The notes: generated from the letters alone by a model not told the origin. Positions 12,615 to 25,035 are shown, numbered from the whole stretch's first letter. The stretch is 59,452 nucleotides of DNA, filler included, from Platydemus manokwari (GCA_037951405.1; 4 parts of 4 records of this genome joined end to end with filler, not necessarily neighbours in it), one strand, 5' to 3'. Program-made: numbers and translations.

Positions 12615-12686
<72 letters not shown>
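12615..12686. repeat. (AAT)n microsatellite at a gap edge
   Basis: Perfect AAT run of ~24 units. Confidence 0.95.

Positions 12687-12689
<3 letters not shown>

Positions 12690-16897: not shown

Positions 16898-16898
<1 letters not shown>

Positions 16899-16930
<32 letters not shown>
16899..16930. repeat. (ATT)n microsatellite
   Basis: Direct inspection. Confidence 0.85.
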
Positions 16931-16931
<1 letters not shown>

Positions 16932-17911
16932 TATTTATTTTTATTATATCAATAATGATATCAATTTATTATCATTTTATTATTCTCCACTTATTATTAT
17001 TATTACCACAAGTTATTTTTCAATAAGTGGCCTTTCCGTATCGCTCAATATCGATTTGATATTATTCTTATGCTGATTTATTATTATTCTCATAAGTGGG
17101 CATTCTGTATCATTAATCATTATTCTCAAAAGTGCCCCAGTTATTAAATTAATTTTGGTACCAATTATTATTTTAATCAATTATTATTTTACAAATTATT
17201 GAGATTATTCCGATGTCAAATTCTCACATTTCCATTCTTAAGAATGTTTGAATGAACGGGAATTTTATCTTTATAAAACACTAAAAATTATATTTAACAA
17301 ATATAATTAAAATATAAATATTTTTTAAACTTCCGATTATAAATCCTTTCAATTCATTTGAAATGTAAAGTTTATTCTAGTTTTTGCTAGGTTTTCAAAA
17401 ATATCACAACTTTGACTTGAAAAGCTAATCTAATTAAATATGAATAAAATTTTGAAATAAAATTTTTTCACAAATCTATTTCAAACATGATAATAATAAT
17501 AATGATTTCCCTGTGTGCTTATTTCAAAATTTTGAAAGGAAAACAAATTTAAGAATAATAAAAATTGATTTTATAATAATGAAAATTTTTAAGATAATTT
17601 TTTATGATAACCAAGAGATGCGCAATATTATATTAAAACAACAAAATGTATTTTAAATATAATAGGATAGAATAAAAAAAATAAAATAAAGCAACATGAT
17701 GATATGATAATGATAAATTAAGTAAAATATCAATAAGAAATAAAGATGTTTATCACAACACTAATAAATGACTCAAGATATGATCAAATCAATAAACGTT
17801 GTCAATAAAATAACAAGTAAACCGCCCAAATAATAATGAGAAATAAATAAATCACAACATTTACTGATGACGCAAGATGTGAACAGATCACTATTAGTAC
17901 TAATCCTTGCT

Positions 17912-18817
17912 CTAAACTATGTAATCTCCAGCTGTGTAATCATAAAGAGCACATTGTTTGCCATTTTTAACAGAAAAAGAAACGCATCTTGTCGTCCTCA
18001 TGCACAGTATTCCACATTCCATATTTGATAGAACTTGCATTTTCATAAAATGTTTCGGAGTTCCATAAGGCTTATAGGGTTCAATCAAGCGATCTATAAT
18101 AATGTAATCAATAATCACATTTACATTAATCAATATACAAATCATTGAATTAGATTTGATAAATTCATAGCCAAATACTTCCACCTCACACATATTCATT
18201 GCTTCTAAATGAAAATATTTCGAAATAATCACTGATCTTGCAACCTACAGAATATCATTTATAGGAAAAACAGAAAATAATCAATACAAATCTATTAAAT
18301 ATGATATCAGTCTTGGTGGCTTTCTTTACTGAACTATAGTATGTATATCCGTACCGCTTCGCACTTTTATTTGAAATGTCATCATAACTGCCTATAATCC
18401 AAAGCTGCCTGGGAGGGTATTCTTGAATTTAATGAAATGTGAGATTTACAGAATAACAAAAAGCCAACTTAGCTTGTCAAGTCTAATATAAATTCGAATC
18501 ATTGTAATGACAGAAACATGATCGAGAATCACACCCCAATATTTAGTCTTATTCTCACCATAGCTTTGATAACACGAGTCTAAAAAATGAATAAAACTAT
18601 CGATCATTGAATGTATTCACCATTGCCATAAATTCCATCAACAGCTTTCTTATGCGAATAATATATGCTGTCATTGAAAATATTAGCAGCAGATGTCGGT
18701 TTATCTCTTGAAAGCAGAGTAACTAAGAAGAGTTTATTGATAAATATAAAAGTAAAATATGTTACCATTAGCAGCATTGATATGAGATACCAGATAGAAT
18801 AAATTAATAAAATACAT
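17912..18817 (-). CDS. Secreted F-type lectin (fucolectin/FTP, F5/8C-like) domain + PAN/apple domain protein, 6 exons, ~228 aa
   Basis: Exons 18817-18766, 18722-18621, 18579-18469, 18421-18288, 18244-18139 and 18093-17912. Five GT-AG introns of 43/41/47/43/45 nt all keep the frame (687 nt total). Hydrophobic N-terminus; FTP motifs LSRDKPT, KAVDG, YWGVIL, IRIYIRLD, ARSVII, MCEVEVFG; PAN motif ECGILCMRTTRCVSF...QCALY. Confidence 0.8.
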
Positions 18818-19199: not shown

Positions 19200-20730
19200 G
19201 ATTTTAGAAAATGTACTCACGGATATATGAGAAAGCAGATGGTTGACAATGGAGTAAAATTGAGTGTAACATACATATCAGTTAAAGAAATTACAGCAGG
19301 TTCTTTTGGATGAAATGATATGATGAAGACTTGTGGGATTTTCCTTGCACGGATAAAATCAATTGATGCCAAGGACGTGGGAAAAAATACAGGGACCAAG
19401 ATAGATTCGAAATTGCACTGAATTATATTTCATTAAATAGGTGTGTACAATAAAATGGTTCAACTTTTATAGCATCTCGGATCGATTTGGGACTAACTTA
19501 TCTGGTTAAGTACAAAATTTGAACAAAAGCGAAACCAGAAGGCAGCCAATTAATTCAGAAATCAAAATTCCAGAATTGATAGAAAAATTAATGCCATAAC
19601 GTCTTGAAAAACTCCTGTAACTCTCCTTCGGTCATATTTTCAAAATAAAACAATAGACTAGGATGTGTTTCGACCTCTAAAAATTAAACGAACAGTAGTT
19701 TCTTCTCCGGTACCTGATATCAAAATGTTATTGAACTCGGTATATGGGAGGATAGTTTTCTTAAGTATAAATTTAAACCAAGCATATTATCAAGTCAAAC
19801 TTGAGGAAGATTCCAAGTTTAAAACGACATTCAGCACTAGAACTGGGCAGTTCCGTTTTAACAGACTATCATTTAGACTATGTTCCCACCAGCAACTTTT
19901 CAGACTCTACTAAATACAATATTCAAGGATTCAATTTAGAAAGGCATTCTTGTTGTTTATGGAAGAACACTAGACAAACACAAGGAGAAACTCAACAAGG
20001 TTTCCAGGTTGATTAAATCATTAGGTTTGAAAATCAATCCAGATAAATGTGCTTTTGGCACAAGGAAATTGCATGTCTGGATCATACAGTTAGTGCAGAA
20101 GGTATAAGAAGCAATAATGACAAAGTAAAGAAGATTAAGGAAGCAATAAAAATAGGTTTCATTACACAGTTAAGACGATTTATTATTAACTAGGCATTGA
20201 TTACAGATTTGTTATATACGATGATGACCGGAAGTGACAAGAAATTGGAGTGCACTACAGACTGTGAAAGGAACAATTATGCACCGATTGTGGCCTTTCC
20301 GAATCAAAACAAAGAGATGATTTTAGATACTGACGCTAGTTTCGGAGCGAATCGAAAAGAAGTAAATTCTTGTGCCAAACATTTATTCGTAAAAACTAAC
20401 GAGATACCACATGAAGAGTTGTGCTATATCGGTAGTAAGAAATTGGTTGATCAGATTGGTGTTGATACTGCGCACTTTGGGTAATTTATTACTAAAACAA
20501 AGCACCTGTTAGTTATTTTAGATAGATAATAAGTAAGATAGTAATCTTCGTGCAACTTATTTGACAAGATGATATCAGTATTTCCACGTCTATCATAGAT
20601 CTTTGGGTATCATGGATCTTTAGGTATGGTGCTCCAAAATCAATACTCACTGATCAGGGTAGAGTCTTTGAGAGAAAGGACATGAAGCAAGAATTCACCT
20701 CCACATACCAACACCAGGTAAATGACTTAC
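19200..20730 (+). mobile_element. Ty3/Gypsy LTR retrotransposon pol remnant (RT, RNase H, integrase pieces)
   Basis: INLNQAYYQVKLEEDSKFKTTFSTRTGQFRFNRLSF (RT); GLKINPDKC; PIVAFPNQNKEMILDTDAS (RNase H); YGAPKSILTDQGRVFE (integrase). Many stops and deletions. Confidence 0.88.
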
Positions 20731-23571
20731 GATATTTATTATTATCATTAAAAATTTCATATTTTGATAGCAGCCAGTGGTATGTAAATGATGTATGTTT
20801 GTGATTAATAATATTTGAGGTTAAATCTCAAATATTTCTTTGAACCTCAAATAAATTAAAGGATAATTTTATAGATCAATCTGATTGGTTCAAAAATGTT
20901 AAATTATACTTAATGATATACACAGTTAAATGAGATACAACACCATTGTAATCATTAAAACGTTAATAATAATTGATATCAGAACAGGATCTCTTTCCAA
21001 TACTTTTTCTGACATTCAGTTCAGAAACACCATTTGGTTATTTAACTAGTACAATTTATCTTTCGATCAAGGATATGCTTCATTCACTTATTTTGTCATT
21101 TCATTTCGGGTTTTTATTTTAAATTTTAAAATTAATATTTATTTATTATTTTTGTTTTAATTCATTTCAATCGTTTAATGCTTATTTTATATTTAAATGT
21201 GATTTAGATTTCCGTTATAGATTTCTGTGTTATCGTTCCGTATCATTCCATATTATGAGATTGATTTTTAACTTTAACCATCTATTTATAATAAGACCAT
21301 TTTCTAAAATTTCTTGAGGGAAATGTATCAAAAACTTTCAAACATGTTATATCTGTTATTTCATTTGTTTGACTCATTCTCGATTATACGAGTCAGCTTT
21401 CATAAAATAAAAGTGATATTATAATACAAATACTGAAGAATGGAAGCACATGAAGGCAGGTTGTGAGCAGACAAAAATGGAAATAGGAATTGAAAATAAA
21501 CGCATTGATAAAAAGGTATCAAATATTATGTAATGTAGAAGAAATAACTCTCATTTGGGTTTCGTTAACATTCTTGATTGTTATGAACAAGATCATTTTC
21601 GCAATTCTCAACAGCTAGTTTCATATGTTATTTCATTTTTATTTATTCTTACTACTTGTTATATTTTTGTAAAGTTATTAACTAAATCAACTAATTTGTG
21701 AAACGTTATCATACAATTTCAACAATGGACGATTGCTGTTTGACTTTTTTTAGGAATACGCAATGTGGTTTAGAAGACGAACAACAGGCGGTCAAAATTA
21801 TTTGCGGTTTTTTATAAGATTGTTATCTTTTTGGCGTGTATGAGAAAATGATGTTAGGTTAATTTAATTTTTGCTATTAAGCCATCCGTTAGGGAATTGT
21901 TGTTTTGGTTACAATATAGTGAATAACTTTGAAAGTTTGAAAACTCTAGTATTGGATCGCAATATGAATTAATTTATTATTAACAAATTATTACAAAATT
22001 TTTAACATTAATTATTATCAAATGTGAATTCTGTAAAGCTGATATTTTAATAAAATATAAATTAAAAAATAATTTTTGAAAAATAAAAACGGTTCCAATA
22101 GTAAAAAAAGCAATCGGTTTCCATCGAAAAAGTTTTTATTGATTATATTATTCTGGATATTTAAAATATGTGGCATTTATCCAACTCCAAGCAAAAATTG
22201 AATAACTGATTGATAAATTTATTGATAAACAAATTTTACAATGGATTACGCAAACTAGGATAAGAGTCATTTAGTATTTAGCTTCCTCGCAATGCTAAAA
22301 TCAATTAAATAATAATCAATAATGTTTGTAATAGAGTTTATCAAAATTACACATTACATTATCGTGCAAGTTTTTCAAATTTTTATATGGCCATAAGGAG
22401 ATTTTGTTCCAATATATGAAAAAAGTGAAGAGGCATTGTTTTCGTATGTAAATATTTAGCTGTTTATTTTGGGTTTGTGAATTTGTGAATAAACTTGAAT
22501 AAAAAATATAAAATTTTGTAAAAAGAAATATTTGTTGTGATTTTGTTGAATAGTTATGAGTTTGTTAGAAAAATTAGACTTGATTAATTTTGAGTGTTAA
22601 CAAACTTAATCAATATATTAATAAAATTATCTTTTTCAAAGATATAGATCAGCTCGGCACAGCATGTACTTTATTATTACCCTCTTTCTTACTTTTTAAA
22701 ACTTCCCCGGTTTCTTTTCATTTTTCTCATTTTTCTTATAATTACTTATTTTTATTAATTAAATAAATTTATTTTTTCTTTAGCTTGAAGATTTACGACA
22801 CTGATAGGCAATACCAGTATCCGACGCGATACCATACATTCAATAACATGAAGAAAGTAAACAAAAACAAAGTTCACCACATTGAACTCGTAAAATGTAG
22901 CTAATAGTCTCTGACAACATACCTACAAAAAAATTTTGGCAGGTTAAATTGTCTCGAATATATACTCGATGTGAACTTTTTTCGTAGTTGTAATAATATG
23001 AATTACACCACGATACTTTTGTTAATAAAAAATGTCGTTAGAAAATTTGGAATATTTTAGTAAAATTATATGATAAATGGGATATATCGATGTTTCTAAT
23101 CAATTACTCCCAGAAGTCAAAGGCACGTTATATATTTACTAAACTGAATAATGTCAATACTACTAATGTTGGTGCCTGGGGTTCAGATGTTAAAAAACAA
23201 TTAAGTTAGACTAGAAAAACAAAAAAATATTTAAAAGTAATATCTAAAAGTGGATATGAAGTATTGTAAATCCAATAAAAGAATGGTGTAACTATACAAG
23301 ATTATTGCTTTTAAAAATCACTTAAATAGGAGGCTTATGAAAATCATTATTCTAAAATTTGTATGAAAGATGGTATCGCTAAATTTACTAAACCATTTTT
23401 AGAACCGGAACTGTATCCTTACATGTTTGATGGACGTTTATAACCCTATGGGTTAACATTCGTAAAATGATTGTATCATTTCACATAGATTTCACCTTGT
23501 ATGGCGACCCTAAATGAATGAAATTAAGTAATTTTGTTTAGAAAATGTATTCATTTCTCATGAATTTTTGT

Positions 23572-23576
23572 AAAAA
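23572..23576 (-). terminator. Pol III terminator (TTTTT) of the 5S copy
   Basis: T5 run immediately 3' of the 5S mature end on the minus strand. Confidence 0.75.
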
Positions 23577-23677
23577 GTCTTCGACACCGCGTATTCCCAA
23601 CTAGTCACCCACGTAAGTACTAACACGGCCCTACTCTGCTTGACTTCGGAGGACGAACGAGATACGGTATACCCAGA
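23577..23677 (-). rRNA. 5S rRNA gene copy, 5'-truncated (about nt 18-19 to the 3' end)
   Basis: Minus strand reads TCTGGGTATACCGTATCTCGTTCGTCCTCCGAAGTCAAGCAGAGTAGGGCCGTGTTAGTACTTACGTGGGTGACTAGTTGGGAATACGCGGTGTCGAAGAC. It matches eukaryotic 5S hallmarks (ATCTCGT, GAAG..AAGC A box, GTTAGTACTT, TGGGAATAC C box). The first ~17-18 nt are replaced by a T-run. Confidence 0.92.
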
Positions 23678-23721
23678 AAAAAAAACAAACCTTTATTTAT
23701 TAAAAATACAAATAAATCAGG

Positions 23722-23900
23722 AGGTCGACTAGCCAAGAGATTGAAGGTTGCGTGACCACAAGGCAGTACCCTTAAAGAGAATCAGGTTGGTCCAGTCAAA
23801 AGGTATGAACCTGGAAATCAAGAAGGGCACTGATCTCAGACTACCTCATAGAAGGAAAAAAAGGTATCACAAAACGTTGCAAGAACAAGCTAGTCGACCC
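23722..23900 (-). ncRNA. ~180-nt multibranched structured RNA domain (unassigned)
   Basis: Closing stem GGGUCGACUAGCU/GGCUAGUCGACCU (13 bp); inner stem CAGUGCCCUU/AAGGGUACUG (10 bp); nested CAGGUU/AACCUG; hairpin UACCUU/GAGGUA. The G-U wobbles work only on the minus strand. Confidence 0.6.
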
Positions 23901-23978
23901 GCTTCTTAGAAGTTGGATTGGATTGGATTGAAGCCCGGAAGATTCATCACCGTCGAATAGTAAGGTTCATCGGCATTG

Positions 23979-25035
23979 AATCACCACCTTCTGTTTTGCT
24001 CGAGAGCGCGAAGGCAGTGACGATCTGAGCAAATACCAATCTCTGTTTTGCCAGAGGCTCGAAACTGATATTGCCAGATTCTTCGGGAATTCTTCCAACT
24101 CTACTCTATTTTGCCTTTGGCTCGAGTAAGAGTCAATCCCAGAGATCATCGGACAAGGTATTGACGCAGACTGATCTCGATCATTGAAGCGGGCTTTTGA
24201 TTGGAAATTCTTTTGGATTGGCTGAACTGATCATCAGAATTCGTATTCAGACATCGAATCGGATTAAGTCCACGAATATTTGAACCATCACCTTCTGTTT
24301 TGCTCGAAAGCTCGAAGGCAATGGCGATCCAAACAATTATCAAGTTCTGTTTTGCCAAAGGCTCGAAAATGATAATGTCGGATTCTTCGGGAATTCTGAT
24401 AACTGTGGTCTGTTTTGCTCGAGAGCTCGAACACAGTTTTTCCCACTTGATCATCAGCAATTTAGTCCTCAAAGTTCCAATCTTCTTTACTTGTTCCCGG
24501 AATAAGTCCGTTGTTCAATTCTCCATCATTTGCTAAATTTTCAAGAAAAATCTCAAGAAATTTTCATCAATTTAACAAAAAACATCACCGAATTGATAAT
24601 TGATTGTGTAATCACAACATCTGGCACCAGAGGGTTCTCAGTAGTCAGTCGTCATTAAGGTTCAACAATACTGAGGGATTAATTAGCTAAATTGGAAAAA
24701 ATTTCAAAGAAATTAGCTCCAAAAAGGCAAAAAATATCACCAGATTAATATGTGATCACGTAATCACATAATGATTGAAAAATATCATAAATTGATATTT
24801 TGAGCAATTATTGGCTACCATATATCAATTTTTGGACAGAATAAGCGGATTGAAAAATGGTAGCAAATTGTTCAAATATCCGATGAGATAGTGTATTTGA
24901 GGGACATCATTGATCATCGGAAGAGGCAACAATATGACTTGCTCGATCTTGCCCAATGATCTCTGTTTTGCCAGAGGCTCGAGAATCAATGGGAATGATT
25001 GTATCAACTCCTGTTTTGCTACGAGGCTCGGAGAT
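23979..25035 (-). repeat. Array of at least 8 stem-internal loop-hairpin units (+ strand core CTGTTTTGC-N5/6-GCTCG)
   Basis: Cores start at 23991, 24043, 24106, 24295, 24347, 24410, 24963 and 25011. Units 1-3 are duplicated as units 4-6 (304-bp offset). Each core is flanked by its own inverted repeat. Confidence 0.85.

What the first reader, a model, noticed from the sequence alone, without database searches (positions are those of the whole stretch)
23979..25035. Array of at least 8 covarying RNA hairpins with a near-invariant GA/AAAACA internal loop
SEEN: on the minus strand each unit is [variable outer stem]-GA-GCY-(3-4 nt loop)-RGC-AAAACA-[outer stem']. Unit 1 has GC in place of GA and unit 3 has AAAAUA. 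Outer stems differ in sequence yet pair: unit 1 GUCACUGCCUUC/GAAGGUGGUGAU, unit 4 GCCAUUGCCUUC/GAAGGUGAUGGU, unit 2 AAUAUCAGUUUC/GAGAUUGGUAUU (each 12 bp contiguous using G-U pairs that exist only on the minus strand). Also unit 3 ACUC-U-UACUC/GAGUA-GAGU, unit 6 AACUGUG/CACAGUU and unit 8 CUCC/GGAG. The inner stem switches compensatorily between GCC/GGC and GCU/AGC (unit 8 is the exception), and unit 4 has a UUCG loop. Spacings of 52/63/48 nt are not consistently multiples of 3, so this is not a coding repeat. INFERENCE: selection on RNA structure, giving a multivalent protein-binding or packaging scaffold or a repeated ribozyme-like module in a mobile-element transcript. The GA-stem-AAAAC segment echoes the hammerhead stem II junction (GA-stem-GAAAC) but lacks CUGA. 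I do not recognise it as a described motif.
Basis: partly seen in the sequence, partly recalled or inferred. Interest (0 to 1): 0.88.

Follow-up and report, generated by a model that had tools for sequence, protein, structure and literature searches.

The report
Repeat-borne array of covarying hairpins
An AT-rich animal-like genome carries a moderately repeated sequence with at least eight hairpins that share an invariant 21-base core while their stems mutate in matched pairs, which marks a structured RNA module that matches no described family and whose function is untested.

Summary
Eight copies of UC-GA-GCY-(3-4 nt)-RGC-AAAACA-GA lie on the minus strand between 23980 and 25035, against 0.2 expected by chance. 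Each is flanked by arms that pair.

- **Covariation:** 87% of aligned stem cells pair, against 31-48% when partners are slid, and 11 of 15 pairs show changes on both sides.
- **Strand:** the outer stems hold 13 G-U pairs and no A-C mismatch, so the folded strand is the minus strand.
- **Other copies:** they restore the two deviant core letters seen in this window.
- **Organisation:** the units sit in a roughly 304-nt higher-order repeat, three hairpins per repeat. This belongs to a family of roughly 10-40 copies in the source organism.
- **Neighbour:** the array abuts a 5'-truncated 5S rDNA unit, but that junction is unique.
- **Searches:** no Rfam family matches. There is no hammerhead core and no k-turn. 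The overlapping ORFs have no homologues. Viral, metagenomic and prokaryotic collections gave only chance hits.
- **Not tested:** expression, because no RNA runs were available.

Best reading (about 0.45): a multivalent protein-binding hairpin scaffold in a repeat or mobile-element transcript. The ribozyme idea is not supported. The finding is interesting, but it rests on one genome.

The parts
23980..24021 (-). Hairpin unit 1: 12-bp outer stem (3 G-U), GC in place of GA, GCU-CUCG-AGC, AAAACA
   Evidence: CM score 48.7 bits. Most other genomic copies read A at 24008, which restores GA.
24025..24079 (-). Hairpin unit 2: extended stem of about 20 bp, GA, GCC-UCU-GGC, AAAACA
   Evidence: CM score 52 bits. 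The variant at 24036 in other copies turns a U-G pair into U-A.
24095..24136 (-). Hairpin unit 3: 12 pairs plus a bulged U, GA, GCC-AAA-GGC, AAAAUA
   Evidence: CM score 43.8 bits. Other copies read C at 24108, which restores AAAACA. They also vary in the apical loop at 24116 and 24118.
24284..24325 (-). Hairpin unit 4: 12-bp outer stem (3 G-U), GA, GCU-UUCG-AGC, AAAACA. It is the paralogue of unit 1, with two compensatory double changes.
   Evidence: CM score 52.5 bits.
24330..24382 (-). Hairpin unit 5: stem of about 17 pairs with a 2x2 mismatch, GA, GCC-UUU-GGC, AAAACA. It is the paralogue of unit 2, with three compensatory double changes.
   Evidence: CM score 54.5 bits.
24401..24438 (-). 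Hairpin unit 6: 9 pairs plus one mismatch, GA, GCU-CUCG-AGC, AAAACA. It is the paralogue of unit 3, with different arm sequences that still pair.
   Evidence: CM score 47.9 bits. The unconstrained minimum-energy fold prefers an alternative CUCGAG pairing.
24952..24993 (-). Hairpin unit 7: 12 pairs with a bulged U and a U.U mismatch, GA, GCC-UCU-GGC, AAAACA
   Evidence: CM score 47.6 bits.
25003..25035 (-). Hairpin unit 8. Its 5' arm is cut off by the edge of the piece. GA, GCC-UCGU-AGC with a C.A mismatch, AAAACA.
   Evidence: CM score 32.4 bits, model positions 5-46.
23976..24583 (-). Two copies of a roughly 304-nt higher-order repeat. Each has three hairpins, a conserved GAAUUCCCGAAGAAUC box and flanking YGAUGAWC boxes. 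A third, partial copy lies at 24880-25035.
   Evidence: A 139-nt core is 82% identical at a spacing of 304. Alignments A3 and A4. All 5 YGATGAWC hits in the window fall here, on the minus strand.
23692..23979 (-). Non-hairpin-array tail of the repeat family, between unit 1 and the 5S junction. It holds one long hairpin (23754-23842) and an AAUAAA at 23696-23701 followed by a U-rich run.
   Evidence: Summed contig depth is 700-1400, against about 34-40 for single-copy flanks. Fold. Sequence.
24484..24880 (-). AT-rich spacer inside the array with a roughly 125-nt tandem duplication. It has fewer copies than the hairpin blocks.
   Evidence: Depth is 125-440. The joint 24615->24741 skips 125 nt in other copies.
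23421..23690 (-). Neighbour, not part of the module: one 5S rDNA repeat unit lacking about the first 17 nt of the 5S RNA (5S at 23576-23690, spacer at 23421-23575)
   Evidence: Rfam RF00001, 47.8 bits. The canonical 278-bp unit joins 23677 to 23421 through 21 other letters in runs X2 and X3. Depth is 6x10^4 to 4x10^5. The junction contig has single-copy depth of 33.9.

Best explanation
SHOWN:
- The segment is an array of at least eight hairpin modules.
- A 21-22-nt core is essentially invariant. It consists of UC, GA, a 3-bp GCY/RGC mini-helix with a free 3-4-nt loop, AAAACA and GA.
- The 10-22-bp stem that closes the core has diverged almost to randomness, yet still pairs through matched changes.
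- Wobble pairs occur only on the minus strand, so the folded molecule is the minus-strand transcript or a minus-sense single strand.
- The modules are organised as three hairpins per roughly 304-nt higher-order repeat.
- They belong to a middle-repetitive, rearranging family in the source genome.

INFERRED:
- The constant asymmetric internal loop, with its four fixed flanking base pairs, is a recognition surface for a protein. The variable apical loop and the variable stem sequence are not read.
- Several copies in one RNA would make a multivalent binding scaffold. It would load many copies of one factor onto the repeat or mobile-element transcript, for packaging, RNP assembly, export, localisation or stabilisation.
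- An AAUAAA with a U-rich run about 280 nt downstream of the last hairpin fits a position in the 3' part of a polyadenylated transcript.
For: - **Motif count:** 8 against 0.21 expected.
- **Folds:** every complete unit takes the same architecture.
- **Arm-shuffle controls:** z = -1.5 to -3.8 per unit.
- **Covariation:** 86.8% of cells pair, against 31-48% for slid partners. 11 of 15 pairs change on both sides. 0 of 500 shuffles reach the observed values.
- **Paralogous repeats:** at least 7 compensatory double changes and 3 one-sided G-U changes, against 2 disruptions.
- **Strand:** 13 G-U and 0 A-C in the stems. The covariance model scores 32-55 bits on the minus strand and about 7 bits on the plus strand. 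For the 789-nt fold, z is -5.9 on the minus strand and -2.65 on the plus strand.
- **Other genomic copies:** the best-supported variants inside the hairpins restore GA (24008) and AAAACA (24108), change G-U to A-U (24036), or fall in the apical loop (24116, 24118). None breaks a pair.
- **Family status:** 451 contigs at 80-100% identity, summed depth of 700-1400 against about 34-40 for the flanks, and many joints between hairpin blocks.
- **Not coding:**
Against: - There is no evidence of transcription. No RNA run holds the stretch.
- All comparative evidence comes from paralogues in one genome, and from near-identical low-depth contigs in two other runs. Relatedness therefore inflates the shuffle statistics.
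- No binding protein or element-encoded gene is in view, because the piece ends inside the array.
- The identity of the repeat family (transposon, satellite or multicopy lncRNA) is undetermined.
- Two of seven units are slightly more stable on the plus strand.
- AAUAAA is frequent by chance in a genome of 25% GC.
Confidence: 0.45

Rival explanations
1. Single-stranded DNA hairpins. The modules would fold in a minus-sense DNA strand and serve a DNA-level process of the repeat. Examples are recognition by an HUH/rolling-circle-type or other transposase, replication priming, or recombination between modules.
For: - G-T wobbles are also tolerated in DNA hairpins, so the 13:0 asymmetry and the covariation fit this reading too.
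- The family rearranges between hairpin blocks: joints skip or go back between modules.
- No transcription has been shown.
Against: - Known eukaryotic ssDNA-based elements carry one or two terminal hairpins, not internal arrays of eight or more.
- No Rep, helicase or transposase gene and no element terminus is visible in the piece.
- The conserved part is an asymmetric A-rich internal loop, which is typical of RNA-protein sites. It is not a nick-site loop.
Confidence: 0.12
2. Small-RNA precursor hairpins. A constant terminal 'loop' cassette would carry variable stems that are diced into diverse small RNAs, forming a natural hairpin cluster.
For: - Units 2, 3, 4 and 5 can extend to about 17-22 pairs, giving hairpins of about 60-70 nt.
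- The hairpins are clustered on one strand.
- The arms vary while the loop is constant.
Against: - The conservation pattern is the reverse of miRNA genes, where arms are conserved and loops are free.
- Units 1, 6 and 7 have only 10-12 contiguous pairs, too short for Drosha or Dicer.
- The only miRNA-model matches were far below threshold and lay outside the hairpin units: mir-458 at 19.3 bits against a gathering score of 59, in the tail at 23754-23842, and MIR7533 at 15.6 bits against 230, in the AT-rich spacer.
- The arms match nothing else in the 12-kb piece.
Confidence: 0.1
3. Neutral satellite or minisatellite with quasi-palindromes. The arm complementarity would be kept by DNA-level templated repair (arm-to-arm correction) and the core by recent duplication. 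In this reading there is no functional RNA.
For: - The region is built of tandem duplications with periods of 304 nt and about 125 nt.
- It lies in a repeat-rich junkyard, next to a 5S pseudo-unit and a dead gypsy element.
- It is polymorphic in module number.
Against: - Templated correction gives perfect Watson-Crick arms. Here 13 G-U pairs and no A-C mismatch are seen.
- Variant counts between copies show no marked strand bias in C>T against G>A (28 against 24). Biased deamination therefore does not explain the asymmetry.
- The arms have diverged to near-randomness while the 21-nt core stays invariant. That argues for old duplications under purifying selection, not recent copying.
Confidence: 0.1
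4. A self-cleaving or otherwise catalytic RNA module: a hammerhead-like or new small ribozyme repeated in a satellite or retrozyme-like transcript.
For: - The GA-helix-AAAAC segment resembles the hammerhead helix II junction GA-helix-GAAAC.
- The roughly 304-nt tandem unit is strongly structured (z = -5.9). That is the size range of ribozyme-bearing satellites and retrozymes (own knowledge).
- CUGAUGA-like boxes (YGAUGAWC) recur in the array.
Against: - No Rfam ribozyme model (hammerhead, hairpin, twister, pistol, hatchet, HDV-like) matches, even at E up to 10.
- The general-base position G12 reads A.
- No CUGANGA strand adjoins the helix. The YGAUGAWC boxes lie 20-65 nt away and form no helix II.
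- The module is a two-helix hairpin, not a three-way junction.
Confidence: 0.05
5. A repeat within a protein-coding sequence.
For: ORFs of 108 and 60 aa run through the hairpins on the minus strand.
Against: - The ORFs have no homologues, no Pfam family and no gene on record.
- The motif is read in different frames, and the spacings of 52 and 553 nt are not multiples of 3.
- Compensatory arm changes have no coding explanation.
Confidence: 0.02

Closest known systems
Tandem protein-binding repeat modules of long non-coding RNAs (Xist A-repeat; Drosophila hsr-omega 280-nt repeats). Comparison from own knowledge.
   Same: Several (about 8) copies of a short conserved core are set in one transcript at spacings of tens of nucleotides. 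The core is presented by hairpins, and spacers evolve freely. The presumed function is multivalent recruitment of one protein. The higher-order unit is about 300 nt, as in hsr-omega.
   Different: There is no sequence similarity. Here the stems are long and covary and the conserved part is an asymmetric internal loop. The sequence is a multi-copy genomic family rather than a single gene. Expression is unproven.
3' stem-loops recognised by the reverse transcriptase of 'stringent' LINEs and their SINE partners (such as the eel UnaL2 type), and the R2 3' UTR. Comparison from own knowledge, plus the Rfam R2 model tested.
   Same: It is a cis-acting hairpin in the 3' part of a repeated element's RNA. 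Structure and a few loop nucleotides matter, while stem sequence does not.
   Different: Those elements have one terminal hairpin next to the 3' end. Here at least 8 internal copies lie 280 nt or more from the putative end. There is no Rfam R2 match, no element ORF in view, and no poly(A) or microsatellite tail in the DNA.
Dispersed packaging-signal hairpins of RNA viruses and coat-protein operator hairpins (MS2/PP7 type). Comparison from own knowledge. An Rfam MS2 hit exists only elsewhere in the piece, at 17.6 bits and below threshold.
   Same: Many hairpins have variable stems and a small constant recognition feature, such as a bulged A or an A-rich element near a short apical helix. This gives cooperative, multivalent protein binding.
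   Different: The core sequence and geometry differ. The host is an animal-like nuclear repeat. No capsid gene is in view.
Hammerhead-bearing satellites and retrozymes (newt satellite 2, Schistosoma Sm-alpha, Penelope-like element hammerheads; PMC4209133 for the last)
   Same: It is a tandem or repeated genomic family of a few hundred nucleotides with a conserved small RNA fold and a GA...AAAC motif flanking a short GC helix.
   Different: The catalytic core is absent: there is no CUGANGA, G12 is replaced by A, and there is no three-way junction. No Rfam hammerhead hit was found.
Kink-turn (Kt-7-like) internal loops. Comparison from own knowledge.
   Same: The 5' strand GA-GCC and the 3' strand GGC-AAA mimic the non-bulged strand and the C-stem plus 3-nt bulge of a k-turn.
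   Different: The bulged strand continues AC-A where a k-turn needs G-A for the tandem sheared pairs. The k-turn register also conflicts with the covarying 12-bp stem.

Membership tests
Hammerhead ribozyme | Conserved CUGANGA strand immediately 5' of helix II | tested here: not met
   The 5' strand reads YUC-GA directly after the covarying stem. The YGAUGAWC boxes lie 20-65 nt away and are not joined to the helix.
Hammerhead ribozyme | GAAA 3' of helix II (G12 general base) and a three-helix junction with a cleavage site | tested here: not met
   AAAACA is invariant, or AAAAUA in one unit. The architecture has two helices.
Hammerhead and other Rfam self-cleaving ribozymes | Match to the family covariance model | tested here: not met
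   cmscan of 23300-25035 and of the whole piece at E up to 10 gave no ribozyme family.
Any Rfam 15 family | Match at or near the gathering score over the hairpins | tested here: not met
   The only significant hit is the 5S rRNA at 23576-23690. Nothing overlaps the eight units.
Kink-turn | Tandem sheared G.A / A.G pairs after a 3-nt bulge | tested here: not met
   By inspection of alignment A1, positions 1b and 2b read A and C. The covarying stem register excludes the k-turn register.
Box C/D snoRNA | C box RUGAUGA and D box CUGA brought together by a terminal stem, 70-120 nt apart | tested here: not met
   C-box-like YGAUGAWC is present five times. No CUGA lies at the required distance (inspection). 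No snoRNA model hits the array.
Animal miRNA precursor cluster | Stem of about 22 bp or more in every hairpin, with arms more conserved than the loop | tested here: not met
   Units 1, 6 and 7 have 10-12 pairs. The arms are the least conserved part and the loop region the most conserved.
5S-rDNA-specific non-LTR retrotransposon (Mutsu-like) | Many copies joined to the 5S gene at the same site, with a 3' poly(A) at the junction and two ORFs | tested here: not met
   The contig bridging the 5S junction has single-copy depth of 33.9, while the family has 700-1400. The junction carries a T-run, not an A-tail, on the hairpin strand. No ORFs are in view. Features of Mutsu are taken from PMC5340908.
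Structured cis-acting RNA element (generic) | Base pairs maintained by compensatory changes beyond controls | tested here: met
   The caveat is that the sequences are paralogues from one genome.
Structured cis-acting RNA element (generic) | Transcription of the folded strand | not testable with these tools
   No RNA run holds the stretch.

The most novel reading that the evidence does not exclude
The module is a previously undescribed RNA family with a fixed 21-nt asymmetric-loop core on a freely evolving stem. It would either be the dedicated recognition element of an uncharacterised mobile element's RNP, or have activity of its own. The activity could be a new small self-processing motif that releases roughly 300-nt units from a tandem transcript.
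Probability: 0.15. Interest if true: 0.8.

Novelty: new variant of a known kind. Interest (0 to 1): 0.55.

Why it matters
If the hairpins are transcribed, this is a clean natural example of a multivalent RNA scaffold. One small internal-loop motif has been kept unchanged through many duplications while its stems turned over by compensatory change.

It would define a new RNA motif with no Rfam match. It would also give a handle for finding the protein that reads the motif and the repeat or mobile element that carries it. The covariance model built here could be used to trace the family in related genomes. If the sequence is not transcribed, it documents strand-specific structural constraint in a DNA repeat, which would itself be unusual.

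Tried and rejected
1. Rfam searches at permissive thresholds over the piece and over the array alone found nothing on the hairpins.
2. I tried to fetch more copies by using the overlapping ORFs as bait.
   - The search for homologous proteins with the 108-aa ORF found no hit.
   - Exact look-ups of the 60-aa and 102-aa ATG ORFs found nothing on record.
3. I scanned viral, metagenome and prokaryotic genome collections for the core pattern. Every locus had a single match. The viral loci and the listed metagenome loci scored at most 31.5 bits with the covariance model, against 44-55 bits for the seven complete units, so I take them as chance. The prokaryotic loci were not scored with the model.
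4. RNA evidence: two run searches found no RNA library.
5. Organism identification:
   - An F5/8-type-C/PAN-like exon gives only a weak animal signal in the Atlas, with a score of 0.81 and Mollusca, Arthropoda and Cnidaria clusters.
   - It has no homologue in the word-indexed search.
6. A Mutsu-like 5S-targeting LINE was rejected, because the junction is unique and there is no A-tail.
7. Nematode Ruby-motif and Forkhead-site readings of the plus-strand CTGTTTTGC were rejected. The sequence differs, and neither explains the covarying arms.
8. k-turn, C/D box, hairpin-ribozyme loop B and MPMV CTE-like readings were rejected by inspection.
9. Small-RNA target search: the arms match nothing else in the piece. 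The piece is only 12 kb, so this says little.
10. Literature searches for the motif, and for hairpin-bearing satellites with compensatory change, found nothing relevant.

Full report
**What is there.** On the minus strand between 23980 and the edge of the piece at 25035 there are eight copies of a module. I write it as [5' arm]-UC-GA-GCY-(3-4 nt)-RGC-AAAACA-GA-[3' arm].

- The nonamer GCAAAAYAG occurs 8 times in the window. All 8 are here and on this strand, against 0.21 expected from shuffles.
- Start-to-start spacings are 52, 63, 189, 52, 63, 553 and 48 nt.
- Unit 8 is cut by the edge of the piece, so 'at least 8' is right.
Units 2 and 5 extend to about 17-22 pairs.

**Is it more than chance?**

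- ViennaRNA gives the proposed architecture as the minimum-energy fold for units 1-5 and 7, and for unit 6 under a core constraint.
- Keeping the core and shuffling each arm gives z-scores of -1.5 to -3.8. Between 1 and 81 of 1000 shuffles fold as well, depending on the unit.
- On the 8-unit alignment A1, 86.8% of cells form standard pairs, against 30.7-48.2% when the 3' partners are slid by 1-3 columns.
- 11 of 15 pairs show changes on both sides, and no shuffle of 500 reaches the observed values.
- These are paralogues, so the shuffle control overstates significance. The slide control keeps relatedness and is equally clear.

**Higher-order organisation.** Units 1-3 and 4-6 are two copies of a roughly 304-nt repeat with a 139-nt core at 82% identity. 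Units 7-8 belong to a third, partial copy.

- Between the two full copies, the stems carry at least seven compensatory double substitutions. Examples are U-A to C-G and C-G to U-A in units 1 and 4, and three in units 2 and 5.
- There are also three one-sided changes through G-U and two disruptions.
- Units 3 and 6 occupy the same position yet have almost unrelated arm sequences that both pair.
- The repeat also carries a conserved GAAUUCCCGAAGAAUC box. Its UUCCC can pair with a conserved GGGA upstream of units 3 and 6.
- It also carries YGAUGAWC boxes. All five matches in the window lie in the array, on the minus strand.

**Which strand?**

- The outer stems hold 13 G-U pairs and no A-C mismatch. 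On the plus strand, each of those G-U pairs would be a mismatch.
- Covariance model R1 scores the eight units at 32-55 bits on the minus strand and about 7 bits on the plus strand. Nothing else in the 12.4-kb piece exceeds 14.5 bits.
- The 789-nt minus-strand fold has z = -5.9, against -2.65 for the plus strand.
- Five of seven single units are more stable on the minus strand.
- A strand-biased mutation process is an unlikely cause. Differences between genomic copies show C>T 28 against G>A 24.

**Evidence from other copies.** I laid the contigs of three public runs on 22900-25035. In the run that holds the sequence:

- 23692-25035 collects 451 contigs at 80-100% identity.
- Their summed depth is 700-1400, and 125-440 over the AT-rich spacer 24484-24843.
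- Contigs that match this locus exactly have depth 34-40.

This is therefore a middle-repetitive family, of the order of 10-40 copy equivalents. Many joints skip or go back between hairpin blocks, so module number varies between copies.

Five of the best-supported variant positions printed (the table is truncated) fall inside the hairpins:

- 24008 restores GA in unit 1.
- 24108 restores AAAACA in unit 3.
- 24036 turns a U-G pair into U-A.
- 24116 and 24118 lie in the apical loop.

None of the five breaks a pair. Two other runs hold near-identical fragments at depth 2.5-2.8. These are probably the same or a very close organism at low abundance, so they give no independent phylogenetic depth.

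**Surroundings.**

- The piece is about 25% GC and poor in ORFs.
- It has a degraded Ty3/gypsy-like pol on the plus strand at 19662-20801.
- It has a fucolectin/PAN-like exon. That hit is weak: Atlas score 0.81, animal clusters. It suggests an animal-like nuclear genome.
- Immediately 3' of the family on the minus strand lies a 5S rRNA match at 23576-23690 (47.8 bits).
- The read data show that 23421-23677 is one 278-bp 5S rDNA unit lacking 21 letters. That is about the first 17 nt of the 5S RNA plus 4 spacer letters. The unit stands at enormous copy number elsewhere.
- The contig bridging the 5S junction has single-copy depth (33.9). The hairpin family is therefore not a 5S-specific insertion element, and the juxtaposition is a local accident.
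- The family's last 30 nt before the junction read AAUAAA, UAAAGG and a U-rich run. This is compatible with a poly(A) signal for a minus-strand transcript, but weak evidence in so AT-rich a genome.

**What it is not.**

- **No Rfam family** matches the hairpins at E up to 10.
- **Hammerhead:** the resemblance is limited to GA-helix-AAAC. The CUGANGA strand is absent, G12 is A, and there is no three-way junction.
- **K-turn:** the core mimics half a k-turn (GA-GCC / GGC-AAA). It lacks the G-A on the bulged strand, and the covarying stem fixes a register incompatible with one.
- **C/D snoRNA:** C-box-like YGAUGAWC boxes have no D-box partners.
- **miRNA precursors:** the conservation pattern is the inverse of miRNA genes, and several stems are too short.
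- **Coding:** the overlapping ORFs have no homologues, no Pfam family and no record, and they read the motif in different frames.
- **Other collections:** scans of viral, metagenomic and prokaryotic collections returned only single chance matches. The viral and listed metagenome loci scored at most 31.5 bits with R1.

**How it most likely works.**

What is shown: a single-stranded, minus-sense nucleic acid is under selection to form these hairpins and to keep a 21-nt asymmetric internal-loop core.

What I infer:

- The apical loop and stem sequences are free, while the internal loop and its four neighbouring base pairs are fixed. The loop probably folds as 5' G-A facing 3' AAAA-C-A. The G may pair with the C, which unit 3's U would also allow.
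- The core is therefore a docking site for a protein, and the array is a multivalent scaffold on a repeat-derived transcript.
- The most natural setting is the 3' part of a mobile-element or repeat lncRNA, serving RNP assembly, packaging, reverse-transcriptase recognition, export or stability.

I put this at about 0.45. The more general statement, a selected minus-strand structure, I would put near 0.8.

Rivals:
- ssDNA hairpins for a DNA-level process (0.12)
- small-RNA precursors (0.10)
- neutral quasi-palindromic satellite (0.10)
- a catalytic module (0.05)
- coding (0.02)

**Novelty and limits.** I could not place the module in any described family. As a kind, tandem protein-binding hairpin modules in repeat-derived RNAs are known: the Xist A-repeat, hsr-omega repeats, LINE 3' stem-loops and viral packaging signals. 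I therefore rate it a new variant of a known kind.

The limits are these:
- Expression is untested.
- All sequences come from one genome.
- The carrier element is unidentified, because the piece ends inside the array.
- The organism is unknown to me.

Noticed in passing
window 23421-23690 (-): This is one 5S rDNA unit: the 5S at 23576-23690, 47.8 bits, lacking about its first 17 nt, plus a 155-nt spacer. In the public runs the canonical unit is a 278-bp tandem repeat. Its summed depth is 6x10^4 to 4x10^5, against about 35-40 for single-copy flanks, so it is an exceptionally abundant 5S or 5S-derived satellite. The window's copy differs from that consensus at several positions (for example 23590 and 23638), so it is probably a pseudo-unit.
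   Followed up: partly
window 23144-23972... specifically 23965-23972, 24144-24151, 24229-24236, 24449-24456, 24912-24919 (-): A second recurring motif, YGAUGAWC, looks like a C box. All five matches in the window lie inside the hairpin array on the minus strand, and they flank the hairpin triplets. No D-box partner or snoRNA model match was found.
   Followed up: partly
window 24484-24880: An AT-rich spacer within the array contains a roughly 125-nt tandem duplication. Other genomic copies have only one unit (joint 24615->24741, depth 65.8).
   Followed up: no
window 23696-23701 (-) and 23678-23690 (-): An AAUAAA is followed by GGUUUGUUUUUUUUU right at the junction with the 5S fragment. It could be a poly(A) signal with a U-rich downstream element for a minus-strand transcript, or a chance match in AT-rich DNA.
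   Followed up: no
window 19662-20801 (+): A degraded Ty3/gypsy-like pol has reverse-transcriptase, RNase H and integrase remnants in three frames, with stops. The Pfam hits are weak (RVT_1 and RT_RNaseH_2). No LTRs were found in the piece.
   Followed up: partly
window 17915-18244 (-): An open stretch of 110 aa has an F5/8-type-C (fucolectin-like) end and a PAN/Apple-like cysteine pattern. The nearest Atlas clusters come from molluscs, arthropods and cnidarians (score 0.81, a lead only). It may be an exon of a host lectin-like gene.
   Followed up: partly
window 12615-12688 and 16898-17005: There are long trinucleotide microsatellites, (AAT)x24.7 at the piece's left edge and an imperfect (TAT)x36. 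They are typical of a very AT-rich eukaryotic genome.
   Followed up: no
window 23754-23842 (-): A long hairpin of about 90 nt lies in the non-array tail of the repeat family. It has a weak sub-threshold resemblance to a miRNA precursor model (mir-458, 19.3 bits against a gathering score of 59). Other copies vary within it, for example at 23767, 23776, 23781 and 23795.
   Followed up: no
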